Shown: one piece after another, positions 12,417 to 30,637 of the stretch
Layout of the letters: each line of letters starts with the position of its first letter
Numbering within the stretch: position 1 is the first letter of the stretch
IMG/VR virus record: IMGVR_UViG_3300032242_002041
Location: 124,001 to 188,000 of that record
Reading direction: 5' to 3' (one strand)
Length of the DNA stretch: 64,000 bases
Translations under genes and position numbers: made by a program
The notes under the pieces: generated by a model
What the model was told of the DNA's origin: nothing
What the model saw: the letters and a program-made list of their open reading frames with translations, nothing else
The model's database searches: none

Positions 12417-12445
12417 ATTATACAGCATAATTTGGTAGTTGTCAA
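12417..12445 (-). promoter_or_regulatory. Sigma70-type promoter
   Basis: TTGACA-17-TATAAT. Confidence 0.9.
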
Positions 12446-13572
12446 TTGAATTCTATTGCATTGAATTTAGAAATTGCTCGATCTTGATACCATTGATATA
12501 GTGTGGTTTGAGCAACTGCAATATTCTGTCCAAAACGAGTTTTACACAACTGCCATTTTTGTTTTACATAATCCAAATCCGTTAGTAATTGGCGGTTAGT
12601 TTCGATGGCAGCAACAACACGGTCAATTGGATTGGCAATCGTGTCATAGCTGTGATCAACAATGTCGTCAAACAGGTCAAATCCAACCTGTCGTAAGTGT
12701 TCAACTGCTCCTACTCCGCTCAGTAATATGGGAAAATTGCACCCGTACACACTGTTTAAAAATTTTTCGGTAATCATAAAACTTGGAGATTCAAATGAGC
12801 TTTCAGAAACAACTTCTACAAAACTATGTTGATATCGATTGCGTAGTTTGTTATTAAAATTTGCTACATTGTCGAATATAATATTGGTGTTATAAATTTC
12901 ATAGTTGTCAGTGATCAGTTGTTGATTTTGATTTATTTTTTGGTACCCATTGGCCAATACCTGTGTAAGTTCACTGTGCCTTTCGTCAAACTGCCAAGAA
13001 ATATAATCAAGAAATTCAGACTTTGGATGTTGATCTAAATATGAAATGTCGCCGTACTGATCATAACCCATTCCAAATAGATAACTTAGCAATACAATAC
13101 GATGTGATCTAGCGTGCCTGTTTAGGCTAATAAATGTGTGAGTGGATTTAAAATTTTTGTCCAGTACTGGATTTAGTGTAGGGTAGGAGTTGGACTGATT
13201 AGTAACGTCTCCTCCCCATGGCACAAATTGTATATTGCTATTAGTTGTTTCTAAACTAGCATTTTCAAGACTGGTAAAAATAATAAATGTTTTGCGCGAA
13301 TTCCTTTGCGCTAGATTGTTTAACAAATCAATTCCAGCATTGGCTGCGTCATTCCAATAATTGTATTCAACACCAAGATTTAATAAATCCTTAATCCCAA
13401 GTATTACATTAGACTTTGTAGGTTGTAATGTAGATAAAAAGGTTTTAAATTTTTCAAGATTGCTGGTCCAAATATAATATGCTTCATAGTCGCAATCAAC
13501 TTGGGATAATACATTTTGAAATAGGTCGTAGGTAAAATTATCGCTAGGTCCTCTACTGACAGTAGTAATCAT
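12442..13572 (-). CDS. Putative glycosyltransferase (TEK motif family), paralog 2
   Basis: VVSESSF...ITEKF...FPI...GFDLFDDIVDHSYD. Confidence 0.5.
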   Translation of the reverse strand: MITTVSRGPSDNFTYDLFQNVLSQVDCDYEAYYIWTSNLEKFKTFLSTLQPTKSNVILGIKDLLNLGVEYNYWNDAANAGIDLLNNLAQRNSRKTFIIFTSLENASLETTNSNIQFVPWGGDVTNQSNSYPTLNPVLDKNFKSTHTFISLNRHARSHRIVLLSYLFGMGYDQYGDISYLDQHPKSEFLDYISWQFDERHSELTQVLANGYQKINQNQQLITDNYEIYNTNIIFDNVANFNNKLRNRYQHSFVEVVSESSFESPSFMITEKFLNSVYGCNFPILLSGVGAVEHLRQVGFDLFDDIVDHSYDTIANPIDRVVAAIETNRQLLTDLDYVKQKWQLCKTRFGQNIAVAQTTLYQWYQDRAISKFNAIEFN

Positions 13573-14198
13573 TGTGGGCCCCTAACTGCAAACCAATCGT
13601 GGTATAGCGTTTTGGCAGCATCAACATCGGGTGTCAACGACATTTCTTGAGTAATTTTTAAGTATTCAACAACAAAATTATCTACCGATTCAAGCATACT
13701 AGTTAAATTGATTGGTTTCATTGAGTACTTTGTTTTTAGTTGGTTTAAATTGGATAACTCGACCTTGTAGGTTGGTCGATAGGTGTAATGTAATTTTTTT
13801 TGATTATCGAGAACCCATGGCAAAAACTTATCGTCTAATTCAACGTAATAAAAATCATGATCTGTGCTGGAGATATGCTGCTCAAGATCTAAAAATTCAG
13901 CCGGGTGTATTGCATAGGCTATATGAGAAAACGGTTTAGAAAATAATGTATTAAAATAATTGTATAGCTCACGATTATAAAAATCTGGCCACACTCTATG
14001 AAACTCCTGCCAATTGGGATAGCAGTCAGAGACCTTAGAAAAAGAATAATGCTCGGCTCTACTATTAAATTTAGGGATTTCTCCATCAATAAGATTTTGT
14101 AGGGTAACCTGAGGTATTGTTTCTGGACTCAAACTGAATAGTCTGGTTAGAAAGTTGCCAGCGTGTCCGGGCATATACAGGATAAAAATATGTTTCAC
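13569..14198 (-). CDS. Hypothetical protein, possible sulfotransferase/P-loop-like fold
   Basis: N-terminal ILYMPGHAGNFL; TATAAATA at 14205-14212. Confidence 0.5.
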   Translation of the reverse strand: MKHIFILYMPGHAGNFLTRLFSLSPETIPQVTLQNLIDGEIPKFNSRAEHYSFSKVSDCYPNWQEFHRVWPDFYNRELYNYFNTLFSKPFSHIAYAIHPAEFLDLEQHISSTDHDFYYVELDDKFLPWVLDNQKKLHYTYRPTYKVELSNLNQLKTKYSMKPINLTSMLESVDNFVVEYLKITQEMSLTPDVDAAKTLYHDWFAVRGPQ

Positions 14199-14204
14199 GT
14201 TGGA

Positions 14205-14235
14205 TATTTATAATACCATATAGAGCATATAAATA
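14205..14235. promoter_or_regulatory. Back-to-back T4-like late promoters (TATAAATA on both strands)
   Basis: tatttata 14205-14212 (-) and TATAAATA 14228-14235 (+), each 6-9 nt from a start codon. Confidence 0.65.
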
Positions 14236-14244
14236 TTACTATAT

Positions 14245-14856
14245 ATGTCACAGCCAATTAGAAAAATCAAGCTGCCGCCTCCATCGGCAAAATTAATTGC
14301 TATGTTTAAAGAAGTAGCAGAAAGCAATCTGGTACCACAACCATTGGCAGAACCAAATTTAGCAATAAATTCAACATTTACCTTTGCATCACAGGAAATT
14401 AACCGCCAAGTACAACTTGAATATCTACAGTATATTCCTAATACCAAATTTAGAGCTTTTTTTGGTGTGATGAAAAACACAATGCCTGGTCATCCAAGCT
14501 CTATATCGCCACATACAGACCGTCGTAGGTTGATGTCGTTAAATTACTACATTGACCTGGGCGGCTCTGCTGTTGAAACAGTGTTTTATACTTTTCGTCA
14601 AAATTTTTTTGATGCACGTAAAAGCACACAATTGACGTATTTGAAAGCAGGAAAAAAAACAAAATCTGTAATACTTGATCAAGGATGGTATGCGTTCGAC
14701 GGGGACTTAGCACACAGCGTAGAAAATATTCTTACTACTCGAACTATATTATCATTGAGAATTGTCGAAGGTGACACTGACGAAAACTCAGTTAATAAAT
14801 ATGGCCTGTCAGATTTAATTCGAGATTATCCAGAACTCATTGGCGAGGAAATCTGA
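14245..14856 (+). CDS. 2OG-Fe(II) oxygenase-like (DSBH) protein
   Basis: PHTD (HxD) ... AHSV distal His. Confidence 0.6.
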   Translation: MSQPIRKIKLPPPSAKLIAMFKEVAESNLVPQPLAEPNLAINSTFTFASQEINRQVQLEYLQYIPNTKFRAFFGVMKNTMPGHPSSISPHTDRRRLMSLNYYIDLGGSAVETVFYTFRQNFFDARKSTQLTYLKAGKKTKSVILDQGWYAFDGDLAHSVENILTTRTILSLRIVEGDTDENSVNKYGLSDLIRDYPELIGEEI

Positions 14857-15557
14857 GCCAATACAAGCTGGGCAAAGTTTTTATTAGTAGCTACACCAGA
14901 ATGGAATAAATCTCTTGCCAAATCGACTCTTGAGGTCATAAAGTATTCGGCATTTATTATTTTAAGTTCAATGCCAGCAGTATTACATAATTGCGTTATT
15001 GCCAGTGCATTTTTTGCCGCATTCATTTCTGAGTTTAAATCGTTGAGTATCCATTTTCTATAAAACGGTCTTAGCTCTGCAGGAATAACATTATTTCTTA
15101 ATGTGTCAACATTACATCGTATTAACATATCTTCGTCGATAACTTCGATTCTTCTAATGTTTGGACGACACAGGATAACAAGTTTTGGTTTTATCTTGTC
15201 TAACCAATAATATGCTAATCTAAAAGCAGTATCATTGGAACACCCAGGCATTCCAAGATTGTAATTTTTTAATTTTATTTCGGTTGACACCAAATGTGTC
15301 CAGGTCTTCTCTAGAGGTAATCCGACTCCAAATGTATGGCTGCATCCTAAAAACATCACCGACGGTTCGGCATTGGTAAACTCAGCACATCGAAAACCAT
15401 AACTATTAAGTTTGTAAGTAAATGCAGCATTGAGCCACCCGTTAGCTTCAAGCTCGTGGTACCTTGATTCTAAATGCTTGTTATAAAATTCAACAGAATC
15501 CATGGCAATCCAGGAAAGCTCTTGTCCAGCAAGATTAGAATAAAGACTACGATGCAT
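14826..15557 (-). CDS. SGNH/GDSL-like hydrolase or acyltransferase
   Basis: FLGCSHTFG, NLGMPGCSN, DLFH. Confidence 0.65.
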   Translation of the reverse strand: MHRSLYSNLAGQELSWIAMDSVEFYNKHLESRYHELEANGWLNAAFTYKLNSYGFRCAEFTNAEPSVMFLGCSHTFGVGLPLEKTWTHLVSTEIKLKNYNLGMPGCSNDTAFRLAYYWLDKIKPKLVILCRPNIRRIEVIDEDMLIRCNVDTLRNNVIPAELRPFYRKWILNDLNSEMNAAKNALAITQLCNTAGIELKIINAEYFMTSRVDLARDLFHSGVATNKNFAQLVLAQISSPMSSG

Positions 15558-15564
15558 TATGGGT

Positions 15565-16677
15565 TTAAAATGTTAGTGGATAATATTTTGATCGAATCAT
15601 TGGTATAGCAAACAAATTGTCGGTGGTCATTCCAAAGTATTTTCCAGCCGAATCGTGATAGACATTTAACATTGATTTAACATAATCTTTAAACCATTTA
15701 GTATCTCTAGCACTATCAAACACTTCTTTACTTTGGCCTTGAAGCCTAGCTGTAGTGTAGTCGTTAGGATTATCAACTATCAACTTACAACCCCAATTGG
15801 CTATGTGTGGGTTTTTGCTGTTGGCCAAATCGCCATACCTTCCGGAGGCCAGGCTATATTCTAACCAATCAAATTTAATTGGACTGTGTAAATCATTGTA
15901 GTCAGCTAGATCTCTTGCATCTCGAGCATTAGGATGCTTGTTTTTTATATATTTAAACAGCATGTAGGATTGCTTGACATGTAATTCTGGTAAATCTGAA
16001 GTAAGGAAAAAGCATTCCATGCTAGGGCAATTCATTGGCCTAACATAATTGATATCATCTTGAAAACTATATACTCGGCCGTCTTCATCAAACTGTAATC
16101 TAGGCTTTTCGTATCCAATAATGGACATCACATCTCGGCCCATCATTGTGCATATTTTGTCATGCTCTACTTTCATGCCGCCATGCAAGTTAAATGTATA
16201 ACGTTCTGCTGTGTCCCAAATCCAATCTTCAGAGTGATACTTTTTTTCTAAAAATCCTAACTCTTCGTCGTCAACCATGATTTGACAATGGGGATCGTAC
16301 AGTCCTTTGTCAAAAAATTCATATACTTGACGATACTGTGATTGATATCTCTCGCCTTTTCTAACTCTGGTATACAGCATATCAATGTGTATATTATTGC
16401 GTTCAAATACTTTGTAAATGGTGTAGGCATCTGTGCCGCCACTGAAGTGTAGAACAATTGGTTTGTCTTGTGCTCTTGCTTTTTCAGCAACTTGGTGAGC
16501 TCGTATATCTAATAAACTATCCCAGCTGAGACTGGGCTCAACTGCCCAATTGACTGCATCAAACGCTGATTCAAAAAGATTGAATTTTATTTTTTGATTG
16601 GTTTTGTATGCGTAATTGGCAGCTTGAAATTTATTGAGAAAAAATTGATTGCCAACTTGATAGTGCATTTCATTCAT
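15565..16677 (-). CDS. PP-loop (adenine nucleotide alpha hydrolase-like) enzyme, paralog A
   Basis: LHFSGGTD, IIGYEKP, SDLPELHVKQ; start refined to MNEMHYQVG. Confidence 0.7.
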   Translation of the reverse strand: MNEMHYQVGNQFFLNKFQAANYAYKTNQKIKFNLFESAFDAVNWAVEPSLSWDSLLDIRAHQVAEKARAQDKPIVLHFSGGTDAYTIYKVFERNNIHIDMLYTRVRKGERYQSQYRQVYEFFDKGLYDPHCQIMVDDEELGFLEKKYHSEDWIWDTAERYTFNLHGGMKVEHDKICTMMGRDVMSIIGYEKPRLQFDEDGRVYSFQDDINYVRPMNCPSMECFFLTSDLPELHVKQSYMLFKYIKNKHPNARDARDLADYNDLHSPIKFDWLEYSLASGRYGDLANSKNPHIANWGCKLIVDNPNDYTTARLQGQSKEVFDSARDTKWFKDYVKSMLNVYHDSAGKYFGMTTDNLFAIPMIRSKYYPLTF

Positions 16678-16732
16678 AAAAATACTTATGCTGGGCATAA
16701 TTTTGATAATTAAATATATCCCCGGAGAAAAC

Positions 16733-17683
16733 ATGAAATATTTACTATTACTGTTGGCATTAATGGCGCCAATTATTGCCAATGCATTTGAGCCGCAAAA
16801 AAATCCTATTCAAATTGTTGTTTCGGCAGCACCAGGCGGCCCGGCTGACCAATTTGCCAGACTGTTTTCAGAATTTTTAACAACCCGTGGATATCCTGCT
16901 ACGGTAGTTAACAAACCAGGCGCTAATCGTACCTTGGGTGGTAATTATATCGAGTCCATTCCAGGTAATAATTATACCTTAATAGTTGGCACCAAATCAG
17001 ATTCCTTAATTAACACCATTGTAAAACCAGCTGGAATTCGATATAACGAAACAACATACACCCCGCTGGGAATGATTGGTTATGATTCCAACGTTTTCCT
17101 AATTAATAAATCACAAATACACAGCAGAGATATTACCATGTTCTTAGAAGAATATCGAGTCAACAACAAAAAAATTAATTTTGGTGTTCCTGGAATAGTT
17201 GCCGAGCTTGCTATCAGGGATTTTGTGCGGCCAACAGGCATAGAACCAACTATCTTACAATTTAAATCTTCCTCCGAAGTCACTGCCGCAGTGGCCGCAG
17301 GAACTGTACAAGTAGGAGTAAACGAGCTCACGGCATCGTTGCCTATGATTCGTTCAGGGTATGTTGGTGCGTTGGCAATTACAGCCCCACTAGGATCCAT
17401 TCATAGAAGTCCAAGTTTGCCTAATATTGAAGTAGTTCAAGAAGTTAATAAAAAATTTAATCGACACCACAATCAATGGTTTGGATTTTTTGGTCCTCAT
17501 GACATGAAACCTGAGGCTGTTAAATTTTACTCTGATATGATTGTTGCGTGGCAAACAGATCCTGTTGCTAAGGAAAAAATAGCCTTGCTAATTAATCCTA
17601 AAATAATGAACTCTCAGCAGTTTGAATCGTTCTATAGAGATCAGTTCGTGCAAGCCAAGAAGCTACTGCAAACCAGTGAATGA
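16733..17683 (+). CDS. Bug/TctC tripartite tricarboxylate transporter substrate-binding protein
   Basis: Signal peptide MKYLLLLLALMAPIIANA; APGGPAD, VVNKPGA, QWFGFFGP. Confidence 0.8.
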   Translation: MKYLLLLLALMAPIIANAFEPQKNPIQIVVSAAPGGPADQFARLFSEFLTTRGYPATVVNKPGANRTLGGNYIESIPGNNYTLIVGTKSDSLINTIVKPAGIRYNETTYTPLGMIGYDSNVFLINKSQIHSRDITMFLEEYRVNNKKINFGVPGIVAELAIRDFVRPTGIEPTILQFKSSSEVTAAVAAGTVQVGVNELTASLPMIRSGYVGALAITAPLGSIHRSPSLPNIEVVQEVNKKFNRHHNQWFGFFGPHDMKPEAVKFYSDMIVAWQTDPVAKEKIALLINPKIMNSQQFESFYRDQFVQAKKLLQTSE

Positions 17684-18341
17684 CATAACTATCTTTTATC
17701 AGGGTGCATCCGGCGGGTTTGCTCTATACTACTATCTACTACTAAGCGGCAAGTATCAGTATGATATCCCCACAGTAAAACAGATGATCGGCCAACAGTT
17801 TCCTGACTCGTTAAACAAAAATCGTTCAAGCTGGAAATCAAATGAGTTTTGGCCCGACAACGCTCAACTTAAAGATACACAGGGTAAAAAAATATTTCTA
17901 ATATGTAATCCATTGTTTGTTGATTCCATGTATGATATGCATAAAACTGTTAGCAATGATACTTACAAAATTTTACTCTACACTGATATACATCTACAGC
18001 TTCGTATGGCCTATGATAAGCAGGCCTACTGGTTTACATCAATAAGTCGACAAATGTTTAACGCACCTCGTAGCACTAAAAAGTATCTAAAGCGAATTAT
18101 TAATTCTAGCCTAGACTACAGGGATATTCAAGTAGATCCAGTATTTTTGGATGTAGTAGAAAAATTTTCACCAGATCAATTAATTAGACTGGAAGATTTT
18201 GTTAATTCTGCAACGATAAATAATTTTGCACCACCAAATCAGGATCAACGTGATTTTTTGAAATATTGGTTATCGTTGCAATCTCCTAAGGCAATACAGT
18301 TGATTGAAAAATACTATCGCACTCCTTTTACATTATGTTAA
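17676..18341 (+). CDS. Hypothetical protein, possible sulfotransferase/P-loop-like fold
   Basis: GTG start overlapping upstream stop; IFYQGASGGF. Confidence 0.5.
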   Translation: MNDITIFYQGASGGFALYYYLLLSGKYQYDIPTVKQMIGQQFPDSLNKNRSSWKSNEFWPDNAQLKDTQGKKIFLICNPLFVDSMYDMHKTVSNDTYKILLYTDIHLQLRMAYDKQAYWFTSISRQMFNAPRSTKKYLKRIINSSLDYRDIQVDPVFLDVVEKFSPDQLIRLEDFVNSATINNFAPPNQDQRDFLKYWLSLQSPKAIQLIEKYYRTPFTLC

Positions 18342-18796
18342 ATTTTGAATACATTGATTTACCACCTATCCCAGAGATCTTATATCCGGACATTTATGCA
18401 TCGTTTAGCACTCCGCAGTATAATATTCATAGCTCAGGATACAAGATATGCAACTGCCCAGAATCTGTATACAAGTGGGTAGCTACGGTGTTTGATCCAA
18501 ACATATACAAATATGATTGTGTAAATGCACAGGAAATAACTGCGGACATGATTATACACAAGGACTGGCGAAGAAAGCTAGTATATAATTTTATTCTTGA
18601 ATCAGGAAACGACAGCGTTGAAACTTGCTTTTATCGAGAAAAAAATCCTGCTACCCTAATAGAACGCCATATAATTGAACCGGGTCGCTGGCATAGACTT
18701 AATGTTGATGCATGGCACAATGCTCAAGGATTAACTCCTGGCGATCGTAGAGTAGCCCTGTGCGTATTCAAACAAGCTAACCGCGACAGTTCATAA
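18335..18796 (+). CDS. 2OG-Fe(II) oxygenase-like protein
   Basis: IHKD ... WHRLNVDAWHN. Confidence 0.6.
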   Translation: MLNFEYIDLPPIPEILYPDIYASFSTPQYNIHSSGYKICNCPESVYKWVATVFDPNIYKYDCVNAQEITADMIIHKDWRRKLVYNFILESGNDSVETCFYREKNPATLIERHIIEPGRWHRLNVDAWHNAQGLTPGDRRVALCVFKQANRDSS

Positions 18797-22387: not shown

Positions 22388-22404
22388 GTTTTGATATTTA
22401 GCCC

Positions 22405-22434
22405 AAAAAACCCTGCGATTTTTACATCGCAGGG
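22405..22434 (-). terminator. Intrinsic terminator
   Basis: CCCTGCGAT/ATCGCAGGG stem followed by TTTTTT. Confidence 0.8.
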
Positions 22435-24298: not shown

Positions 24299-24323
24299 AG
24301 CAGAAACATATTTAATATAGAGT

Positions 24324-24401
24324 TGGAGCAACGGGTAGGATTTGAACCTACGGTGTTAGGGATTTGCAGTCTCTCGCATTGGGCCACTCTGCCACCGTTG
24401 C
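24324..24401 (-). tRNA. tRNA-Cys(GCA)
   Basis: Cloverleaf, loop CT-GCA-AA, U73-CCA. Confidence 0.95.
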
Positions 24402-24407
24402 ATTGTT

Positions 24408-24482
24408 TGGCTCCCCTCGACAGATTCGAACTGCCACGATCGGTTTTGGAGACCGACATGCTACCGTTAACATCAAAGGGGA
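24408..24482 (-). tRNA. tRNA-Trp(CCA)
   Basis: Cloverleaf, loop CT-CCA-AA. Confidence 0.95.
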
Positions 24483-24487
24483 ATACT

Positions 24488-24561
24488 TGGAGCGGGATAA
24501 GAGAATCGAACTCTTGACCGAAGATTGGAAATCTGCTGTTTTACCATTAAACTAATCCCGC
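24488..24561 (-). tRNA. tRNA-Gly(TCC)
   Basis: Cloverleaf, loop TT-TCC-AA. Confidence 0.95.
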
Positions 24562-24580
24562 TTAGGATTTTACTACAATT

Positions 24581-24656
24581 TGGCTCCGGTCCCTGGAATC
24601 GAACCAGGCTTCATGGATTAACAGTCCACCGCCTACACCGTGTTTGCTTGACCGGA
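24581..24656 (-). tRNA. tRNA-Asn(GTT)
   Basis: Cloverleaf, loop CT-GTT-AA. Confidence 0.95.
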
Positions 24657-24662
24657 TTTGTC

Positions 24663-24864
24663 TAGTGTTAAAATTACTATTCTATGTTTAAGAGACTCTG
24701 GCCTGTGCTGGTTAACCCAGTCATTGCGCGGATCTCTCCTTGTTGCGTCGTTTACACAGCATCAGCAGGCTGTGGTTTCCTGGATTACAGGCTGACTTGA
24801 CAAGGATGGTTATCTTCCTTAACAGTTAGGATTGCTTACTCTTTCGCACACAATCTTAACACTA
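24663..24864 (-). ncRNA. Unassigned ~200-nt structured RNA inside the tRNA array
   Basis: 13-bp terminal stem TAGTGTTAAGATT/AATTTTAACACTA; internal GCCTGT/ACAGGC, CACAGC/GCTGTG, CTGG/CCAG, TCCT/AGGA. Confidence 0.55.
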
Positions 24865-24870
24865 AACAAC

Positions 24871-24946
24871 TGGCGCTCCCAGCGAGATTCGAACTCGCGT
24901 ACTCACCGTGAAAGGGTGATGTCCTAGGCCTCTAGACGATGGGAGC
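24871..24946 (-). tRNA. tRNA-Glu(TTC)
   Basis: Cloverleaf, loop CT-TTC-AC. Confidence 0.95.
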
Positions 24947-24992: not shown

Positions 24993-25036
24993 CTAGATAA
25001 AAATTTTTATAGTCGATTAAGCCAATAAATAAATTT

Positions 25037-25807
25037 ATGTCCACATATAACATAGAAGTACATGATAATTTAATAGCTCCAGATTTGCATGAAAAAATTT
25101 ATCAATATATAAAAACACTTACCTTTACAGGAGTTTGGTTGGAAGCCAAACGAGTTGAATTTGATTATAGTCTCAACAGTCCCAAAAATCCAGCCGACTG
25201 GATGTTGTATCAAAGTATGGGCAGAGAACTACAATTACATCGGTGCCCGTTAGCCAGCGACGAGCACAGTTTAAAGGCCTTTCCGCCAATTTATTTGTTA
25301 TGGAAAGAGATAAATCGTCGACTAGACAATCAATTTGAGTTAGCTGGGAATCCAGAAGGCATGGCTACTCCGTTAAAAATTCCAACTCCGCAAGATTCTA
25401 ATTTAAAAACAGGATGGCGTGCCTATATAAATGCCCACTATAATACACACGCAGGACACGGCGGCGACGGTTATGCACATCGAGATACACCGTTAGAATA
25501 TAATGATGAAAACACTGTTACTATGCTGTATATTGCTAATCCAGATTGGTATCCATCATGGTCGGGCGATTTAAAATTCTACGGCGAAGATCCCGAAGGA
25601 CTATCCAAAGATCATCAACAGTTTAATCGTGGTATACAGCAACGACGAAATTACAATGTTGGGTGGTTAGATCAAGGACGTGTAGTAAGTCCAGTTCCCG
25701 GACGTTTGATTGTATATGATGGACGTTGTCTACACGGAACTACTTTACCAAGTTCTCCTCTTGAAACACCAATTATTAAAATAGCATTTCGTGCTAGACG
25801 AAAATAA
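25037..25807 (+). CDS. 2OG-Fe(II) oxygenase (prolyl-hydroxylase-like)
   Basis: AHRD, WSGDL, LHG, KIAFR; TAAATA at 25026-25031. Confidence 0.8.
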   Translation: MSTYNIEVHDNLIAPDLHEKIYQYIKTLTFTGVWLEAKRVEFDYSLNSPKNPADWMLYQSMGRELQLHRCPLASDEHSLKAFPPIYLLWKEINRRLDNQFELAGNPEGMATPLKIPTPQDSNLKTGWRAYINAHYNTHAGHGGDGYAHRDTPLEYNDENTVTMLYIANPDWYPSWSGDLKFYGEDPEGLSKDHQQFNRGIQQRRNYNVGWLDQGRVVSPVPGRLIVYDGRCLHGTTLPSSPLETPIIKIAFRARRK

Positions 25808-26434: not shown

Positions 26435-26463
26435 ATTATACACGGTTATTTATCTCTTGTCAA
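26435..26463 (-). promoter_or_regulatory. Sigma70-type promoter with nested TAAATA
   Basis: TTGACA-17-TATAAT; TAAATA in spacer. Confidence 0.9.
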
Positions 26464-26528
26464 CCCCTGTCAGACAACAAATTTGTTTTAATTGTCAGCC
26501 AAGTTACCTGCTACTAAATATTGGCTCA

Positions 26529-27737
26529 ATGCAAGCAACTCACCCTGTTCTTTTTGCAGACTCTAAAGCGCCATTTGATACTGTTGCTAAAAATGGCTAT
26601 TATCAAGTTGGCAATCAATTTTTTAATCATAAGATATCAGCTTTGATAGAAGCTACAAAAACCAATCAATCCGTACAATGGCATTTCAATGATCCGGTAT
26701 GGAATAAAATAAACTGGCGCAGCAATGATTCAATACCGGTTACATATTGGTATCAAGAACGAGCAAAACAATTAAGAGACAAATATGATTATCTGATCTT
26801 GGCATTCAGCGGAGGCAGAGACAGTCATAATGTATTACATAGTTTTATTGATAATGATATTCATTTAGATGAAGTCTGGTGCGATTGGCCGCTTCAACAT
26901 ACTGAAGGAAAGTTTGATTTAAATCCACATGATTGTTCTCCAGAGAACATGCCAAGCGAGTGGACCTATAGTATTAAACCAGAACTAGATCGACTGGCTC
27001 AATCGCATTCTCTTACAAAAATTACCATAACTGATTCTACTTCTACATTGGCTGACGAAAATGCCGAAGATACTTTGATGATATCTCAATACGCATTTTA
27101 TGCCACTGTCAAACGTTTTAGAGAATTAGATACTATTGTTCGACAGCGCAGTAAAAAATACGCTCGGGTAGGAGTCATTGTAGGCATTGAAAAACCACAA
27201 TATCTAATAATCAACGGCTTTATGTCATTGTTTTTTAGCGACAGCACCATGCAGATAAAATCTGACAGCATTGGAGACTGTACTAGAGAAGTTGAATATT
27301 TCTATTGGTCAGCTGATCTGCCCGAGTTGGTTAGATCGCAAGGACATGCAATCCTTGATTACCTAAGAGCCAATCCATGGGCACAGCAATTGCAATCTTT
27401 TGCATCAATTAAAAATAATCTTACAGTTACCATTGATACTCCAGAACAAAGCCAGGCCTGGAGAAATTTAATAAACTACGCAATTTATCCACAATGGGAC
27501 AATAAATTTCAAGTAGCTAAACCTATTGATTTTTTATACAATAATGAATATTATTCTTGGCTGACCAGTCATCAAGATCTCAGGGCATTACAAAGTCATC
27601 GTAATGCCTTGGATAACTCACTAAAATTGGTAGATCACAGATTTTTTAAAAAAGCACACAATAATGCAATTTTAAATTATAAACCTTTTACTACAAAATT
27701 TTTACCAGTTGGAAAACTAGAAAATTTACTAGATTAG
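26529..27737 (+). CDS. PP-loop enzyme, paralog B
   Basis: LAFSGGRDS, IVGIEKP, EYFYWSADLPE; TAAATA at 26515-26520. Confidence 0.75.
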   Translation: MQATHPVLFADSKAPFDTVAKNGYYQVGNQFFNHKISALIEATKTNQSVQWHFNDPVWNKINWRSNDSIPVTYWYQERAKQLRDKYDYLILAFSGGRDSHNVLHSFIDNDIHLDEVWCDWPLQHTEGKFDLNPHDCSPENMPSEWTYSIKPELDRLAQSHSLTKITITDSTSTLADENAEDTLMISQYAFYATVKRFRELDTIVRQRSKKYARVGVIVGIEKPQYLIINGFMSLFFSDSTMQIKSDSIGDCTREVEYFYWSADLPELVRSQGHAILDYLRANPWAQQLQSFASIKNNLTVTIDTPEQSQAWRNLINYAIYPQWDNKFQVAKPIDFLYNNEYYSWLTSHQDLRALQSHRNALDNSLKLVDHRFFKKAHNNAILNYKPFTTKFLPVGKLENLLD

Positions 27738-27738: not shown

Positions 27739-28671
27739 TTACCGAGTTTCTGATATTTGTTTTTCGTAACGATGTACCAAGGCTTTTATTTGCAGTACAC
27801 GCAAATTAAAAAATTCTTCGGTTGACATTTTTGGTTTCCTAAACATAGGAGGACTCATATCCGATGAACTGCTTATGTAATCTGCTCCAAGTTTTTCTTG
27901 TGCTTGATCTAAGATGCGGGCAATTTCCTGTCGCTTGGCCACAGGCATTTTAACATTTGCTACAGTGCTCATAAAAATTGTTGGAGTATTAAATCCTTGC
28001 TCGGATAACGTTTTAATTTCGGGAACTAACGGATTTCTAGTAGGGCAACTGATTCCTAATATTTTTAAGTTGGGATTTTTTGATTTGAAGATTTGATAAT
28101 TTGATACTCGCTCAATTACAAAGTTAATAGGCTCTCCAGCAGCCATTTGAGTCAACGCATCATAGTTGGCTTTATAAACAATATACCTAACTTTAAATCC
28201 TAACTTTTCGCCAATAATAAGTGCAGTTAAATGTGTGGCATTTCCGTAGCCGGTTCCGCCAACAGTAATTTCTTTTTGACCTTTTAGGCTAGCGATTCCT
28301 TGTTGAGTATTACCGATGTTAGTGATTACCGCCCAACAAGCATCACCTTGGGTAGCAACAGGAACATAATCGGATTCATTAATTAACCCCTGTCTTGCAT
28401 TTTCAACAAACGACGGCGCTACTGTGGCCAACCGTGTTTGTGGATTTTGATCCATGGTTTTCAATGCAATGACACCTTGTGCCCCTGGTTTAAATTCTAA
28501 TATAAATTCATATTTATTTTGGCTTCGATTGGCTATGTCCAGCATTTTAATATATGGTGTTGCATTTGGTTGATTGGCGGCAGCTCCAAATTCAATAACA
28601 ATTGTTTCTTGCGCCAACACAGATTGAAATGCTGTTATACAAGCTAATAGACTCAATATTTTTTTAATCAT
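27739..28671 (-). CDS. Bug/TctC-like substrate-binding protein
   Basis: Signal peptide MIKKILSLLACITAFQSVLA; EFKPGAQG, GGTGYGNATHL, IKTLSEQG. Confidence 0.75.
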   Translation of the reverse strand: MIKKILSLLACITAFQSVLAQETIVIEFGAAANQPNATPYIKMLDIANRSQNKYEFILEFKPGAQGVIALKTMDQNPQTRLATVAPSFVENARQGLINESDYVPVATQGDACWAVITNIGNTQQGIASLKGQKEITVGGTGYGNATHLTALIIGEKLGFKVRYIVYKANYDALTQMAAGEPINFVIERVSNYQIFKSKNPNLKILGISCPTRNPLVPEIKTLSEQGFNTPTIFMSTVANVKMPVAKRQEIARILDQAQEKLGADYISSSSDMSPPMFRKPKMSTEEFFNLRVLQIKALVHRYEKQISETR

Positions 28672-28715
28672 AACATTAATAGTTAGTCGACCTTTGCACA
28701 AGCTATAAATATTCC

Positions 28716-29762
28716 ATGCTTAATATACAAGACATTCGTCAAGTACAGATAGAACTCACCACTCGGTGCAATGCTCGTTGCCCGATGTGCATGAGAAATT
28801 ATCGCGGCCTGGATTTCAATTCTGGATATCCTGAAACAGAACTTACTTTAGATAACATAAAACAAATTTTGCAACCAGAATTTTTAAAGCAATTAACTAA
28901 AGGAATAAGCTTCAACGGCAATTTAGGCGATTTTGGGCTAGCCCGAGATGCACAAGAAATAGTACAATGGTTAACAGATCAAGGTGTTCCAGTATACATC
29001 AATTCTAACGCTAGTATGCGTACACCAGACTGGTGGGCCCGACTGGCCCGTCCTGGAGTCAGAATTGGATTTGCCATTGATGGATTAGCGGATACGCACA
29101 GTTTGTACAGACAAGATACCGATTGGCACCGAGTAATAGCCAATGCAACTGCATTTATTCAAGCAGGCGGGCATGCTATTTGGCGCTTTATTCCTTTTGA
29201 TCATAACCAACATCAAGAACAAGCCTGTAAAGATTTAGCTAAAGAACTAGGTTTTTTTCAATTTGAAAATATTAACGAAGGCCGCAACCGCGGGCCTGTA
29301 TATTCTAGACTAGGAGAGTTCAGTCATTGGCTTGGCGAACCTTTTACCGATCAAGAAAAACTAAACCCACCTGATATAAAATCAATGTTAGAAAGTCATG
29401 TTACTTGGTTTGACTATCGTACGGTTAAATCTAACAAAGACACCCAGCCATTAAATTTAATCTGTAATCATAAGCGTATTAAAGAAATTTATATTGCAGC
29501 AGACGGAACTGTTTACCCATGTTGCTTTTTGGGCTTTTATCCCACAACAATGAATCATCCTGGTAATAAAGAATTAAAACCAATGATTAAAAATAACAAC
29601 GCCCTAGAATATCCATTGGAAGAATGCATTAATTGGTTTAACGAAGTTGAAAAATCTTGGGATCGTTCCAGTATTGCCGACGGTAGATTATACACTTGTG
29701 TTAATACTTGTGGGCAACATGACACTCCTATTTTTGCAAAACACAAACAAGAGATAATATGA
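28716..29762 (+). CDS. Radical SAM protein with C-terminal SPASM/Twitch-like domain
   Basis: CNARCPMC; YIAADGTVYPCC; CVNTC; TATAAATA 4 nt upstream. Confidence 0.85.
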   Translation: MLNIQDIRQVQIELTTRCNARCPMCMRNYRGLDFNSGYPETELTLDNIKQILQPEFLKQLTKGISFNGNLGDFGLARDAQEIVQWLTDQGVPVYINSNASMRTPDWWARLARPGVRIGFAIDGLADTHSLYRQDTDWHRVIANATAFIQAGGHAIWRFIPFDHNQHQEQACKDLAKELGFFQFENINEGRNRGPVYSRLGEFSHWLGEPFTDQEKLNPPDIKSMLESHVTWFDYRTVKSNKDTQPLNLICNHKRIKEIYIAADGTVYPCCFLGFYPTTMNHPGNKELKPMIKNNNALEYPLEECINWFNEVEKSWDRSSIADGRLYTCVNTCGQHDTPIFAKHKQEII

Positions 29763-30637
29763 CCAATAGAATAGTAATAGATAAATTAGAATTTTACATC
29801 ACTAACGTATGTAATCTGACTTGTAGTGGATGTAATAGATATAATAATTATAAGTTTGCTGGCTGGGAAAATTGGAATGATTATGAAAAGATTTTTGAAC
29901 AATGGGCAGAAAAAATTGACATTATTAAACCGGTAATATTAGGTGGAGAACCTTTGCTTAATCCCACTATCAACGAGTGGATCAACGGAATTCAGCGAAT
30001 ATGGCCCGCCCACTACTCGCCACAAATTCAAAGCAATGGAACACGTATAGATTTGGTTGACGGGTTATACAACGCATGTCGTAAATCGGGTACATGGATT
30101 GGCATTAGCCTTCATGTGCAAGACGATAGAGATGCTATTTTTAATCGTATTAGAAATTTTTTAGTGCATCCAATTAACGAAACAACTGACAGTAGCTCAC
30201 AACACGGATCAAATTGTCAATTTGTTGATGCAAATAACGTACAAGTGCATGTATGGTTATCTGATCATTTTACACAAAACAATATTATAGAAGGCCCTAT
30301 GGGAGAATTTAAACTATACAATAGTGATCCTATTCTGGCACACAATAACTGTGCATTTGTTAAATTTAAAAATTATCATTTTATCAATGGAAAAATTCAC
30401 AAGTGTGGACCAGCTCCCCTAATGCAACAATTTGATCAGCAGTATCCTTTTAGTATATCAGATGAGGATCGTGCGCTTATACACAGTTATCGAGGGTTAT
30501 CGGTAGATGAATTTGACGAGCGTGGTGAAGAATTTTTCCGTACCATAGATGATCCTATACCACAGTGTAAATTTTGTCCTGAATCATATGAGTATAAAAA
30601 AATACAATTTTCAAATCTAAAGCCTAACAAAATTTAA
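29759..30637 (+). CDS. Radical SAM protein
   Basis: CNLTCSGC; LGGEPLL; C-terminal CKFC. Confidence 0.85.
   Translation: MTNRIVIDKLEFYITNVCNLTCSGCNRYNNYKFAGWENWNDYEKIFEQWAEKIDIIKPVILGGEPLLNPTINEWINGIQRIWPAHYSPQIQSNGTRIDLVDGLYNACRKSGTWIGISLHVQDDRDAIFNRIRNFLVHPINETTDSSSQHGSNCQFVDANNVQVHVWLSDHFTQNNIIEGPMGEFKLYNSDPILAHNNCAFVKFKNYHFINGKIHKCGPAPLMQQFDQQYPFSISDEDRALIHSYRGLSVDEFDERGEEFFRTIDDPIPQCKFCPESYEYKKIQFSNLKPNKI

What the first reader, a model, noticed from the sequence alone, without database searches (positions are those of the whole stretch)
12442..30637. Dense tailoring-enzyme battery with individual late-type promoters and almost no 5' leaders
Seen: 2 B12-radical SAM, 2 other radical SAM, 3 2OG-Fe(II)-like, SGNH, methyltransferase, sulfotransferase-like and GT-like genes in alternating orientation. 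Many starts have (TA)TAAATA only 4-10 nt upstream and no SD (14198, 14245, 22387, 24298, 25037, 26529, 28716; also 581, 35784, 47488). Known: TATAAATA is the T4 gp55 late promoter, and transcription starts just downstream of it. Inference: near-leaderless late mRNAs encode a biosynthetic toolkit that decorates the virion or a late product. Self-contained promoters would let each gene insert in either orientation.
Basis: partly seen in the sequence, partly recalled or inferred. Interest (0 to 1): 0.6.

Follow-up and report, generated by a model that had tools for sequence, protein, structure and literature searches.

The report
Leaderless late promoters on phage enzyme genes
An uncultivated jumbo phage distantly related to T4 places its late-promoter core (TAAATA), and also its sigma-70-type early promoters, so close to start codons that dozens of genes are predicted to give mRNAs with little or no leader, among them an unusually large set of radical-SAM, sugar-handling and other modifying enzymes.

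Summary
The motif observation holds. The window is part of a 228-kb virus contig (about 66% complete, 41.6% GC).

- **Enrichment:** TAAATA is the second most enriched hexamer 3-12 nt upstream of ATGs that open long ORFs (24 of 146 copies against a 2.7% background, p 2e-12). None of these starts has a Shine-Dalgarno sequence.
- **Promoter identity:** the genome encodes a gp55-type late sigma factor. The motif precedes the portal, sheath, tail and virion genes, with no conserved -35 region.
- **Spacing:** in T4 and in the cultured relative PA5oct, the motif lies 13-35 nt from start codons. Here the spacing is bimodal. One group lies at 4-10 nt (peaks at 4 and 5) without SD, and another at 15-33 nt with SD.
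- **Early promoters:** strong sigma-70-type promoters also peak with the -10 box 6 nt from the ATG. Both peaks place the A of ATG at or next to the predicted +1. I infer leaderless or near-leaderless mRNAs; no RNA data were available.
- **Enzyme calls:** four radical SAM enzymes (two B12-type), a methyltransferase, two GT-B glycosyltransferases and two AsnB-like PP-loop enzymes are supported. The "sulfotransferase-like" label and two of the three 2OG-like labels are not.
- **Wider context:** the contig carries 16 radical-SAM-domain ORFs.

The target of the enzymes (virion glycan, DNA or other) remains inferred.

The parts
12442..13572 (-). GT-B fold glycosyltransferase, paralogue A
   Evidence: AF2 model has pLDDT 91. 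Foldseek finds GT-B enzymes at E 1e-4. VIA-align top hit is T4 beta-glucosyltransferase (Z 11.8), effectively tied with protein N-/O-glycosyltransferases; T4 alpha-glucosyltransferase scores Z 10.5. More than 326 homologues, all unnamed.
13569..14198 (-).
   Evidence: No Pfam, NCBIfam, PHROG or PDB-profile hit. It is fused N-terminally to the GT-B protein in relatives such as P0126, 590 aa. Homologues begin MKxIxILYMPGHAGNF, which supports the GTG start at 14198.
14205..14212 (-). TATAAATA late-promoter element, 6 nt before GTG 14198
14228..14235 (+). TATAAATA late-promoter element, 9 nt before ATG 14245; divergent partner of the element at 14205-14212, 15 bp away
   Evidence: The orthologue in L012 has TAAATA 5 nt before the same start codon.
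14245..14856 (+). Small protein with an HxD...H pattern (2OG-like A, unverified)
   Evidence: No family hit. Only 4 homologues in 5.8 billion proteins. The motif was read from the translation.
14826..15557 (-). SGNH-motif protein
   Evidence: Blocks GCSHT, GCSND and DLFH read. DUF6473 hit at E 0.0016, below the cut-off.
15565..16734 (-). AsnB-like PP-loop ATP pyrophosphatase, paralogue A
   Evidence: 24% identical to paralogue B, E 8e-13. SGGTD PP-loop seen.
16739..16744 (-). TAAATA, 4 nt before ATG 16734; lies inside the first codons of the divergent TctC gene
   Evidence: The two start codons overlap in CATG at 16732-16735.
16711..16716 (+). TAAATA of the ordinary class, 16 nt before ATG 16733, with GGAG at 16724-16727
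16733..17683 (+). TctC-family periplasmic binding protein A (signal peptide); first gene of an apparent plus-strand run ending at 20930
   Evidence: PF03401, E 2e-19
17622..18341 (+). P-loop-motif protein B (17% identical to A); start codon uncertain
18335..18796 (+). Small protein with an HxD...H pattern (2OG-like B, unverified)
   Evidence: Weak similarity to 2OG-like A around HxD (E 5e-4). No family hit.
18802..19365 (+). SAM-dependent methyltransferase
   Evidence: Methyltransf_23, E 1.8e-6, over the cut-off
19362..20930 (+). Class B (B12-binding) radical SAM enzyme 1
   Evidence: PF02310 and PF04055, both over their cut-offs. Only sub-threshold matches to named B12-rSAM families. CxxxCxxC seen.
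20927..22387 (-). Class B radical SAM enzyme 2
   Evidence: PF04055, E 1e-13. Matches B12-rSAM families across residues 18-349. 25% identical to enzyme 1 along its whole length.
22395..22400 (-). TAAATA, 7 nt before ATG 22387, directly after a terminator-like hairpin and T-run (about 22405-22434)
   Evidence: The same layout occurs in L012 and, before a different gene (a PP-loop homologue), in L030.
22422..23027 (-). Metallophosphoesterase with a sigma-70-type promoter (11 of 12, at 23060-23088) and an SD: an early-type unit set inside the cluster
23204..24298 (-). GT-B glycosyltransferase paralogue B
   Evidence: Related to paralogue A. 22% identical to A in alignment A2.
24309..24314 (-). 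TAAATA, 10 nt before ATG 24298 and 10 nt after the 3' end of tRNA-Cys
24324..24946 (-). tRNA cluster (Cys, Trp, Gly, Asn, Glu) behind a perfect sigma-70 promoter at 24964-24992. tRNA-Leu (23091-23167) and tRNA-Tyr (25810-25894) lie nearby.
25026..25031 (+). TAAATA, 5 nt before ATG 25037 (A of ATG at the predicted +1)
25037..25807 (+). 2OG-Fe(II) oxygenase (P4H/FlmC-like)
   Evidence: 2OG-FeII_Oxy_3, E 5e-4. FlmC-family 2OG oxygenase, E 2e-9, sub-threshold. Best PDB sequence hit is a prolyl 4-hydroxylase, E 0.23.
26515..26520 (+). TAAATA, 8 nt before ATG 26529
   Evidence: Conserved in L012.
26529..27737 (+). AsnB-like PP-loop ATP pyrophosphatase, paralogue B
   Evidence: AF2 model has pLDDT 89. 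VIA-align gives Z 11.3 to E. coli asparagine synthetase B over residues 6-386, followed by beta-lactam and carbapenam synthetases. S94 G95 G96 D98 are invariant in the family and S99 nearly so. More than 536 homologues, all unnamed.
27739..28671 (-). TctC-family periplasmic binding protein B
   Evidence: PF03401, E 4e-9
28704..28711 (+). TATAAATA, 4 nt before ATG 28716
   Evidence: Conserved in L012.
28716..30637 (+). Two overlapping radical SAM genes: 28716-29762 with a SPASM remnant, and 29759-30637
587..592 (-). TAAATA, 5 nt before ATG 581
35790..35795 (-). TAAATA, 5 nt before ATG 35784
   Evidence: Conserved in L012.
47497..47502 (-). TAAATA, 8 nt before ATG 47488
59632..59637 (-). TAAATA, 4 nt before ATG 59627 (566-aa protein)
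43420..43425 (-). -10 box TATAAT of a 12-of-12 sigma-70 promoter, 6 nt before ATG 43413: early-type promoter flush on a start codon
37677..37682 (-). -10 box TATACT (with TTGACC at -35), 6 nt before ATG 37670 of the 5'-3' exonuclease gene

Best explanation
The window belongs to an uncultivated jumbo phage distantly related to T4. The full genome is about 345 kb; its nearest cultured relatives are the PA5oct and Atu_ph07 group.

(1) [A/C]TAAATA is this phage's late promoter. It is read by host RNA polymerase carrying the phage's gp55-type sigma factor, and it needs no -35 element.

(2) In roughly half of the late units, the element ends 4-10 nt (mostly 4-5 nt) before an ATG with no Shine-Dalgarno sequence. 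By the T4 geometry (motif at -13..-6), transcription should then start on or within a few bases of the A of AUG. These mRNAs would be leaderless or near-leaderless and would be translated by the leaderless route. The other half are ordinary, with a 15-33 nt gap containing an SD.

(3) The same design is used at sigma-70-type early promoters, where the -10 box lies 6 nt before the ATG. Promoters flush on the start codon are therefore a genome-wide habit, not a peculiarity of this cluster.

(4) Each such gene carries its whole expression signal in under 20 bp. Units can therefore sit back to back, abut terminators and tRNA genes, and move between genomes in either orientation.

(5) The cluster at 12.4-30.6 kb is a set of late-expressed modifying enzymes. 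It holds 4 radical SAM enzymes, a methyltransferase, 2 GT-B glycosyltransferases each next to a P-loop partner, 2 AsnB-like amide-forming enzymes, at least one 2OG oxygenase and an SGNH-type enzyme. Together with the NDP-sugar genes further along, these most likely build and tailor a glycan or other decoration on a macromolecule made late. My first choice is virion surface proteins.

Steps 1 and 4 rest on sequence statistics and comparison. Steps 2 and 3 are geometric inference without RNA data. Step 5 is inference from folds and gene context.
For: **Promoter identity**
- The gp55 homologue matches T4 gp55 at E 4.5e-8. It matches phrog_12791 'sigma factor for late transcription' at E 2e-72. 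It lies next to gp46/gp47-like genes (gp47-like ORF adjacent), broadly as in T4.
- TAAATA precedes the portal, tail and virion structural genes and the sheath gene.
- No positions upstream of the motif are conserved.
- TAAATA is also the top-enriched hexamer 13-35 nt before ATGs in T4 (p 6e-10) and PA5oct (p 5e-6).

**Flush geometry**
- 24 of 146 copies lie at 3-12 nt (p 2e-12). T4 has 8 of 225 there and PA5oct 9 of 611, both at background.
- T4 TATAAATA lies 13-34 nt from the ATG and never 4-10 nt (Fisher p 1e-4).
- The spacer histogram is 4:7, 5:10, 6:1, 7:4, 8:2, 9:1, 10:1, none at 11-14, then 15-33. The far group carries GGA/GGAG words.
- 0 of 29 flush starts have an SD-like word.
- A terminator hairpin or a tRNA abuts the motif at 22400, at 24314 and at genome position 204949, and likewise in relative L030. 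This leaves no room for another promoter or leader.
- Sigma-70-type promoters peak at -10 plus 6 nt. Nine of 32 lie at 5-9 nt, against 3 of 85 in T4 plus PA5oct (p 4e-4).
- The motif and start codon are conserved at orthologous genes in a relative with 77-95% aa identity, although gene order differs.

**Enzymes**
- Family and fold evidence.
- The P-loop protein and the GT-B protein are fused in relatives.
- UDP-glucose dehydrogenase-like and two NDP-sugar dehydratase/epimerase-like genes lie in the window.
- A carbamoyltransferase and more radical SAM genes lie elsewhere; the contig has 16 rSAM-domain ORFs.
- Very large Ser/Thr/Gly-rich proteins are possible acceptors.
- 7 of the 26 flush late sites lie in this 18 kb, where about 2 are expected.
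Against: - No transcript data.
- Spacer 4 needs a start 5 nt after the motif, one base closer than the T4 rule.
- Spacers of 7-10 give 2-5 nt leaders rather than none.
- One unit starts with GTG (14198). Leaderless GUG starts work poorly in E. coli (from my own knowledge).
- The start of PP-loop A could instead be a downstream ATG.
- Cultured relatives PA5oct and Atu_ph07 lack the flush pattern. Some metagenomic relatives have a different word (ATTTTTCA) before the homologous gene.
- T4 gp45 was not found, and T4 gp33 gave no local BLAST hit. However, only 66% of the genome is in hand.
- The host is unknown. If its lineage routinely uses leaderless mRNAs, the design is less surprising.
- For the enzymes' target, the best structural match of the GT is a DNA glucosyltransferase. 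Nothing ties the enzymes to virion proteins directly.
Confidence: 0.6

Rival explanations
1. The promoter reading is right, but the enzymes hypermodify phage DNA before packaging. This could be base glycosylation with further tailoring of the sugar or base, rather than decoration of virion proteins.
For: - The top structural match of the GT-B protein is T4 beta-glucosyltransferase (Z 11.8). T4 alpha-glucosyltransferase ranks fourth (Z 10.5).
- The PA5oct group is reported to have modified G in its DNA (10.1101/2025.03.31.646159).
- A PTPS (QueD-like) gene and a twitch radical SAM lie in the window.
- P-loop proteins, radical SAM enzymes and 2OG oxygenases occur in known phage DNA hypermodification pathways (from my own knowledge).
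- Late-expressed DNA modification has a precedent in Mu mom (from my own knowledge).
Against: - Z scores of protein N-/O-glycosyltransferases are within about 1 unit of T4 BGT, which counts as tied.
- No thymidylate-synthase-family hydroxymethylase, ThyX or TGT/DpdA was found in the 228 kb.
- The 'QueC-like' hit is NadE, and the 'QueE-like' hit is a twitch rSAM of another family.
- No DNA methyltransferase was recognised in the cluster.
- The 2OG oxygenase is nearest to the FlmC (flagellin-modification) and P4H families.
Confidence: 0.2
2. The enzymes act on the infected cell or on a small molecule rather than on the virion. Targets could be the envelope polysaccharide, LPS or peptidoglycan, for example to block superinfection. 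They could also make a peptide or natural product (RiPP-like).
For: - The mix of class B radical SAM, SPASM radical SAM, SAM methyltransferase, 2OG oxygenase and AsnB-like enzymes recalls RiPP and antibiotic pathways. Sub-threshold matches include the RiPP C-methyltransferase, PhpK and sactipeptide maturase families. Structural matches include beta-lactam and carbapenam synthetases.
- Phage-encoded periplasmic binding proteins (TctC x2, DctP) and an outer-membrane barrel show that the phage does place proteins in the host envelope.
- LPS-type gene clusters are known in T4-like cyanophages (from my own knowledge).
Against: - No precursor peptide, transporter or polymerase/flippase gene was recognised.
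- Co-regulation with structural genes fits a virion target at least as well.
- All matches to named pathway families are far below their cut-offs.
Confidence: 0.15
3. TAAATA next to the ATG is not a promoter. It would be an AT-rich translation signal or simply an unstructured region, with the genes transcribed from promoters further upstream.
For: - AT-rich sequence before start codons is common, and overlapping words (AAATAT, ATAAAT) are also mildly enriched.
- No RNA data exist.
Against: - The exact hexamer stands out from all 14 same-composition permutations and is strand-specific.
- The same hexamer also sits 15-33 nt upstream of SD-led genes, where it cannot be the ribosome site.
- It is the hallmark hexamer upstream of genes in T4 and PA5oct, and a cognate sigma factor is encoded.
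- Terminators and tRNA ends directly precede it.
- Divergent pairs leave no other promoter space.
- Sigma-70 -10 boxes show the same flush placement at their own characteristic distance.
Confidence: 0.05

Closest known systems
T4 late promoters (TATAAATA at -13..-6) read by gp55 with gp33 and the gp45 clamp
   Same: - Same core hexamer.
- No -35 element.
- Cognate gp55 homologue encoded next to gp46/gp47-like genes.
- The motif precedes the portal, sheath, tail and virion genes.
   Different: - The full octamer is rare here (8 copies).
- In T4, the motif lies 13-34 nt from the ATG with an SD-bearing leader and never 4-10 nt. Here about half the sites are 4-10 nt from the ATG without an SD.
- gp45 and gp33 were not detected in the 66% of the genome in hand.
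Aeromonas phage Aeh1 late promoters (CTAAATA from -12; Nolan et al. 2006, PMC1524935)
   Same: A T4-related phage whose late element has lost the first T of the octamer and favours C before TAAATA. Many sites here do the same: A in 11, C in 8 of 26.
   Different: Nothing in that paper places the Aeh1 motif flush on start codons. Aeh1 is a close T4 relative, whereas this phage is far from T4 (portal about 31% identical).
Leaderless mRNAs with the -10 box 6-8 nt before the start codon (lambda cI from PRM; many genes of Actinobacteria, Deinococcus and archaea; GeneMarkS-2 'group C' genomes)
   Same: A promoter element sits where a ribosome site would be, there is no SD, and an AUG start lies at the predicted +1. 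The sigma-70-type sites here (TTGACA-N17-TATAAT-N6-ATG) have exactly that layout.
   Different: - Here the design is also applied to a phage-specific, gp55-type late promoter.
- It coexists with a full set of SD-led genes in the same genome.
- My literature searches did not find it described for a T4-related or jumbo phage. The phiKZ dRNA-seq study found no leaderless early transcripts (PMC8244752).
Virus-encoded glycan machinery and hypervariable enzyme islands: T4 alpha/beta-glucosyltransferases, LPS/2OG-oxygenase islands of T4-like cyanophages, virion glycosylation in chloroviruses, mimiviruses and mycobacteriophages (mostly from my own knowledge)
   Same: GT-B enzymes of T4-BGT-like size and fold. 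NDP-sugar enzymes, a methyltransferase, a carbamoyltransferase and a 2OG oxygenase are encoded by the virus itself.
   Different: - No membership in a named GT family was shown.
- The density of radical SAM genes is unusual: 16 domain hits in 228 kb.
- AsnB-like paralogues are an unusual addition.
- Substrate and product are unknown.

Membership tests
T4-type (gp55-dependent) late promoter | Conserved -10-like element TATAAATA or its TAAATA core | tested here: met
   Exact TAAATA at about 54 gene-proximal sites. The full octamer occurs at only a few of them (8 copies in the genome).
T4-type (gp55-dependent) late promoter | No -35 element | tested here: met
   No conserved column from -40 to -2 upstream of the motif across 26 sites.
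T4-type (gp55-dependent) late promoter | Cognate gp55-family sigma factor encoded by the phage | tested here: met
   Genome 64281-65372(-): E 4.5e-8 to T4 gp55; phrog_12791, E 2e-72.
T4-type (gp55-dependent) late promoter | Precedes structural or late genes but not replication genes | tested here: met
   Portal, tail, sheath and virion proteins carry the motif. gp46-, gp47- and gp44-like genes do not; the gp46- and gp47-like genes carry sigma-70-type boxes instead.
T4-type (gp55-dependent) late promoter | Co-activator gp33 and sliding clamp gp45 | tested here: inconclusive
   T4 gp45 gave no match, and no T4 gp33 hit appeared in local BLAST. A gp44 clamp-loader homologue is present. One third of the genome is missing.
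T4-type (gp55-dependent) late promoter | Initiation about 6 nt after the motif, late in infection | not testable with these tools
Leaderless mRNA | 5' end at, or within a few nt of, the start codon | not testable with these tools
   Inferred only from geometry: late motif plus 4-5 nt and sigma-70 -10 box plus 6 nt.
Leaderless mRNA | No Shine-Dalgarno sequence | tested here: met
   0 of 29 flush starts have an SD-like word. 99 of 230 called genes have one at some candidate start.
Leaderless mRNA | AUG start codon | tested here: met
   26 ATG starts. One credible GTG exception at 14198.
Class B (B12-binding) radical SAM | N-terminal B12-binding domain plus CxxxCxxC radical SAM core | tested here: met
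   19362-20930 hits PF02310 and PF04055 over their cut-offs. 20927-22387 hits PF04055 and matches B12-rSAM families from residue 18; it is 25% identical to the first enzyme over its full length. The Cys motif is visible. No named subfamily reaches its cut-off.
GT-B glycosyltransferase | Two Rossmann-like domains of the GT-B fold | tested here: met
   pLDDT 91. Foldseek probability 1.0 to OtsA and glycogen synthase. VIA-align Z 9-11.8 to about 40 GT-B enzymes over residues 1-376.
GT10 fucosyltransferase (my lead from an FxxxSE...TEK-like motif and the atlas) | Match to Glyco_transf_10 or a closest fold match to FucT | tested here: not met
   No Pfam hit. The atlas lead scored only 0.79. FucT structures (Z 10.0, 9.7) are not better than many other GT-B enzymes.
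AsnB / beta-lactam synthetase-like PP-loop enzymes | SGGxDS PP-loop and synthetase-domain fold | tested here: met
   S94 G95 G96 D98 are invariant and S99 nearly so. Z 11.3 to AsnB with 296 residues aligned, followed by ASNS, TsnB9, beta-lactam synthetase and carbapenam synthetase.
AsnB / beta-lactam synthetase-like PP-loop enzymes | N-terminal Ntn glutaminase domain with Cys1 | tested here: not met
   Only about 65 residues precede the PP-loop domain, and they do not begin with Cys. The protein is at most a synthetase-only relative.
2OG-Fe(II) oxygenase | Profile match to the double-stranded beta-helix domain with HxD...H | tested here: inconclusive
   25037-25807 has sub-threshold hits (PF13640, E 5e-4; FlmC family, E 2e-9). 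14245-14856 and 18335-18796 have no hits, only the residue pattern.
Sulfotransferase | Profile or fold match; PAPS-binding motifs | tested here: not met
   No Pfam, NCBIfam or PHROG hit. A family profile against PDB sequences found nothing.
SGNH hydrolase | Blocks I, II, III and V with Ser, Gly, Asn and His | tested here: inconclusive
   Blocks can be read in the translation. The only profile hit is DUF6473 at 18 bits, below its cut-off of 27.

The most novel reading that the evidence does not exclude
A clade of uncultivated phages of about 330-345 kb, distantly related to T4, runs a large share of both its early and late programme on leaderless mRNAs. It fuses either a sigma-70 -10 box or the gp55-type late element directly to the AUG. 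Each gene then becomes a self-contained cassette of under 20 bp of signal that can be shuffled in either orientation. This would have allowed the accumulation of an exceptional arsenal of radical SAM and glycan-tailoring enzymes that are co-expressed with the virion. It would imply that the host, or the infected cell after phage takeover, translates leaderless messages efficiently.
Probability: 0.45. Interest if true: 0.72.

Novelty: new variant of a known kind. Interest (0 to 1): 0.62.

Why it matters
gp55-type late transcription is a textbook system, and T4 late messages have ordinary leaders with ribosome-binding sites. A relative in which the late element (and the early -10 box) is set flush on the start codon would be a natural test case in two respects. 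It bears on how a minimal promoter and leaderless translation can be coupled, and on how a phage could favour its own messages late in infection. It would also matter practically. Gene callers that look for ribosome sites will mis-place starts in such genomes, whereas the motif gives a cheap way to mark late genes in metagenomic jumbo phages. The enzyme set (16 radical-SAM-domain ORFs, AsnB-like paralogues, GT-B enzymes fused to a P-loop partner) consists of large virus-only families with no assigned function, so it is a good hunting ground for new virion or DNA chemistry.

Tried and rejected
- **RNA evidence:** No reads were laid, and I did not try another route.
- **Close relatives of the B12 radical SAM:** none in isolate phages, and none in IMG/VR with a single-protein query.
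- **Single-sequence PDB searches** of the PP-loop, GT-like and 2OG-like proteins gave only noise.
- **'Sulfotransferase-like' label:** no family hit, and nothing from a family-profile search of PDB sequences.
- **GT10 membership:** considered from a motif and an atlas lead, then dropped.
- **A preQ0 / 7-deazaguanine pathway in the window:** the 'QueC' hit is NadE, the 'QueE' hit is a twitch rSAM of another family, and no TGT/DpdA is present. Only PTPS remains.
- **Pyrimidine hydroxymethylase or ThyX:** none in the contig.
- **Phage ribosomal protein S21** as a helper for SD-independent initiation: none.
- **TAA of the motif as the stop codon of an upstream gene** (translational coupling): true in only 1 of 26 sites.
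- **Collagen-like repeats** as targets of a P4H-like enzyme: none.
- **Host inference** from an NDP-sugar enzyme: only about 35% identical hits in unrelated MAGs, so uninformative.
- **Generality in cultured relatives:** PA5oct and Atu_ph07 show no excess of TAAATA-N4-5-ATG (20 against 30 controls, and 17 against 26).
- **Literature searches** for leaderless gp55-type late mRNAs or radical-SAM-rich jumbo phages found nothing on point.
- **Genetic code:** no alternative code was needed or used.

Full report
**Setting**

The window is bases 124,001-188,000 of a single 228,286-bp IMG/VR virus contig. CheckV rates it 66% complete, and its GC content is 41.6%. Proteins identical to those of the window also occur on a 345,271-bp contig, which fits that completeness estimate.

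The phage has a T4-type family B DNA polymerase. It has homologues of T4 gp44, gp46, gp47, gp18, gp20, gp21 and gp23. By portal protein, its nearest cultured relatives are the PA5oct group (Arenbergviridae) and Atu_ph07, at about 50% identity. No close relative exists among isolate phages.

**Is the motif observation real?**

Yes.

I ran an unbiased scan of all hexamers over both strands of the whole contig. TAAATA is the second most enriched word 3-12 nt before ATGs that open at least 80 codons. The count is 24 of 146 copies against a background of 2.7% (p 2e-12). Only the SD word AAAGGA ranks higher.

- The 14 other hexamers of the same composition score 2.7-7.6%.
- The reverse complement scores 4 of 146.
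- The TAA within the motif is the stop codon of an upstream long ORF in only 1 of 26 cases.
- None of the 29 flush starts has an SD-like word.

The T4 octamer itself is rare (8 copies). The conserved element is TAAATA with A or C before it and nothing conserved further upstream.

**Is it a late promoter?**

The evidence is comparative but consistent.
- The contig encodes a gp55 homologue. It matches T4 gp55 at E 4.5e-8 and phrog_12791 'sigma factor for late transcription' at E 2e-72. It lies beside gp46/gp47-like genes, broadly as in T4.
- The motif precedes the portal gene, a tail protein, two virion structural proteins and the sheath gene.
- The gp46- and gp47-like genes instead carry sigma-70-type boxes, and the gp44-like gene has no TAAATA.
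- The same hexamer is the top-enriched word 13-35 nt before ATGs in T4 (p 6e-10) and in PA5oct (p 5e-6).
- Aeh1, another T4 relative, is reported to use CTAAATA (PMC1524935).

**What is unusual: the distance**

In T4, the 32 TATAAATA copies lie 13-34 nt from the ATG of a long ORF and never 4-10 nt. In T4 and PA5oct, TAAATA is at background in the 3-12 nt window (8 of 225; 9 of 611).

In this phage the distribution is bimodal:
- 26 sites at 4-10 nt (4:7, 5:10, 6:1, 7:4, 8:2, 9:1, 10:1), with no SD.
- No sites at 11-14 nt.
- About 28 sites at 15-33 nt, nearly all with a GGA/GGAG word between motif and ATG.

The shift relative to T4 is significant (Fisher p 1e-4).

The T4 motif occupies -13..-6 (PMC1524935), so transcription starts at the sixth base after it. 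A 5-nt spacer therefore puts the A of ATG at +1. A 4-nt spacer puts it one base closer.

I then found the same habit at early promoters. Among strong TTGACA-N16-18-TATAAT sites, the distance from the -10 box to the ATG peaks at 6 nt. Nine of 32 lie at 5-9 nt, against 3 of 85 in T4 plus PA5oct (p 4e-4). With the -10 hexamer at -12..-7 (established knowledge), 6 nt again puts the A of ATG at +1. One example in the window is a 12-of-12 consensus promoter at 43420-43448, with the ATG at 43413.

Two promoter classes with different geometries each peak at the distance that makes the AUG the first transcribed bases. The range in between, which suits neither mode of initiation, is empty. This is my main argument for leaderless or near-leaderless mRNAs.

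**Local anatomy supports the reading**

- At 22400, the motif follows directly on the terminator hairpin and T-run of the preceding early gene.
- The same layout occurs at genome position 204949, in relative L012 and, before a PP-loop homologue, in L030.
- At 24314, the motif lies 10 nt after the 3' end of tRNA-Cys.
- At 14205-14235, two TATAAATA octamers face away from each other 15 bp apart, each serving one gene.
- At 16732-16735, the start codons of a minus-strand and a plus-strand gene overlap in the palindrome CATG. Each gene's TAAATA lies inside the first codons of the other.

The region is a mosaic:
- Perfect sigma-70 promoters (12 of 12) on the minus strand lie just upstream of the tRNA cluster (24964-24992) and a small omega-like protein (12417-12445). 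A third perfect site (26435-26463) lies about 540 nt upstream of tRNA-Tyr. An 11-of-12 promoter plus an SD precedes the metallophosphoesterase.
- The modifying enzymes hang on TAAATA elements in both orientations.
- Seven of the 26 flush ATG sites of the contig (plus the GTG one) lie in these 18 kb, where about 2 are expected.

**Conservation and mobility**

A 93-kb ENA contig (L012) encodes the same proteins at 77-95% identity. It keeps TAAATA before the same start codons, although the flanking bases and even the spacer differ (5 against 9 nt for the 14245 orthologue). Its gene order also differs. The convergent pair corresponding to 14245-15557 sits between the two B12 radical SAM genes there, and an extra radical SAM gene is inserted elsewhere.

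More distant relatives are mixed. Some have TAAATA close to the ATG of the PP-loop gene (L016, L022, L028, L030), while others have a different word, ATTTTTCA. Over about 210 kb of relatives' fragments, the flush patterns are about twofold over controls.

The cultured relatives PA5oct and Atu_ph07 show no excess, against 20 versus 3 controls here. The published PA5oct study reports only sigma-70-like promoters (PMC7318152). The flush design is therefore specific to this lineage.

**The enzymes**

Supported:
- Two class B (B12-binding) radical SAM enzymes, 25% identical to each other.
- Two further radical SAM enzymes.
- A SAM methyltransferase.
- Two GT-B glycosyltransferases. The model has pLDDT 91. 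Foldseek finds OtsA and glycogen synthase at E 1e-4. VIA-align puts T4 beta-glucosyltransferase first at Z 11.8, effectively tied with protein N-/O-glycosyltransferases; T4 alpha-glucosyltransferase scores Z 10.5.
- Two paralogous PP-loop enzymes. Their full-length fold is closest to asparagine synthetase B and the beta-lactam and carbapenam synthetases (Z 11.3 over 296 residues), but they lack a glutaminase domain.

Weakly supported:
- One 2OG oxygenase (25037-25807), nearest to the FlmC and P4H families.
- An SGNH-type protein.

Not supported:
- The 'sulfotransferase-like' label.
- The 2OG label for the two small proteins, one of which has only three relatives in 5.8 billion sequences.

The P-loop-motif protein and the GT-B protein overlap by 4 nt here. 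In many relatives they are a single 590-aa protein, so they work together. Both the GT-B and PP-loop families have hundreds of members, all unnamed and almost all viral.

**Wider complement**

- The contig has 16 radical-SAM-domain matches, 11 of them over the Pfam cut-off.
- These include a second cluster at 99.7-116.5 kb. There, tandem paralogues have the SPASM domain before the radical SAM core, and a NodU-type carbamoyltransferase is present.
- The window also holds a UDP-glucose-dehydrogenase-like gene and two NDP-sugar 4,6-dehydratase/epimerase-like genes.
- Elsewhere there are very large Ser/Thr/Gly-rich proteins, up to 34% Ser+Thr.

**What the battery does**

No tool result decides this.

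I favour a glycan or similar decoration built late on a macromolecule, with virion surface proteins as first choice. The reasons are:
- The enzymes are co-signalled with structural genes.
- A uronic-acid-forming dehydrogenase sits with amide-forming AsnB-like enzymes.
- Methyl-, carbamoyl- and acyl-type tailoring enzymes are present.
- The nearest families include protein glycosyltransferases and a flagellin-modification oxygenase.

DNA hypermodification is a serious rival. T4 BGT is the top fold match, and modified G has been reported in the PA5oct group. However, no hydroxymethylase, ThyX or DpdA was found in the part of the genome in hand. A host-envelope or small-molecule product cannot be excluded.

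**Novelty**

gp55-type promoters and leaderless mRNAs are both well known. What I did not find described is their fusion, at genome scale and alongside flush sigma-70 promoters, in a T4-related jumbo phage. The phiKZ dRNA-seq study detected no leaderless transcripts (PMC8244752).

I file this as a new variant of a known kind. The host is unknown. The permuted tmRNA, the TctC and DctP binding proteins and an outer-membrane barrel point to a Gram-negative, perhaps alpha- or betaproteobacterial, host. If that lineage commonly uses leaderless messages, the finding is less surprising.

Noticed in passing
window 31386-31646 (-): A permuted (two-piece) tmRNA gene encoded by the phage. It matches Rfam RF04321 at 70.5 bits against a cut-off of 47. 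ARAGORN also calls it, with a long and atypical tag peptide.
   Followed up: partly
window 11543-35004: Ten tRNA genes (Thr, Ser, Leu, Cys, Trp, Gly, Asn, Glu, Tyr, Met), all on the minus strand. A perfect TTGACA-N17-TATAAT promoter lies just upstream of the Cys-Trp-Gly-Asn-Glu cluster.
   Followed up: partly
window 12166-12393 (-): A 75-aa protein that resembles the RNA polymerase omega subunit. The Pfam RNA_pol_Rpb6 hit has E 9e-4, below the cut-off, and there is no NCBIfam hit. It is expressed from a 12-of-12 sigma-70 promoter with an SD. A phage-encoded omega would be unusual.
   Followed up: partly
genome 99.7-116.5 kb (L007/L008), plus 57.7, 62.0, 180.1 and 188.3 kb: The contig has 16 radical-SAM-domain ORFs. 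A second cluster contains tandem paralogues with SPASM placed N-terminal to the radical SAM core, plus a NodU-type carbamoyltransferase.
   Followed up: partly
window 16732-16735: Start codons of two divergent genes (PP-loop A on the minus strand, TctC A on the plus strand) overlap in the palindrome CATG. Each promoter lies inside the other gene.
   Followed up: yes
window 16733-17683, 27739-28671, 32626-33564, 30688-31140: Three phage-encoded periplasmic solute-binding proteins (two TctC, one DctP/TRAP) and an outer-membrane beta-barrel protein, all with signal peptides.
   Followed up: no
window 39430-48050: Metabolic genes: a UDP-glucose-dehydrogenase-like gene, NAD+ synthase NadE, two NDP-sugar 4,6-dehydratase/epimerase-like genes and a PTPS (QueD-like) gene. 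A twitch-domain radical SAM (over the NF033640 cut-off) lies at 55715-56890.
   Followed up: partly
genome 19905-40276 and 77153-90517: Four very large Ser/Thr/Gly-rich ORFs (830-1779 aa, 25-34% Ser+Thr) and one open frame of 4454 aa. These are possible fibre or surface proteins and candidate glycosylation targets.
   Followed up: no
L015, L017, L018, L019 (IMG/VR relatives): Homologues of the PP-loop gene in another branch are preceded by ATTTTTCA directly before the ATG instead of TAAATA. This may be a different flush signal.
   Followed up: no
window 1528-2823 (-); genome 44706-45566 (-): An HNH endonuclease (phrog_1314) and a homing-endonuclease-like gene. The second is itself preceded by TAAATA plus 5 nt.
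   Followed up: no
window 12442-12498: A 57-bp stretch 93% identical to Burkholderia phage FLC9. It was the only megablast hit of the 18-kb region among isolate phages and has no annotated feature under it.
   Followed up: no
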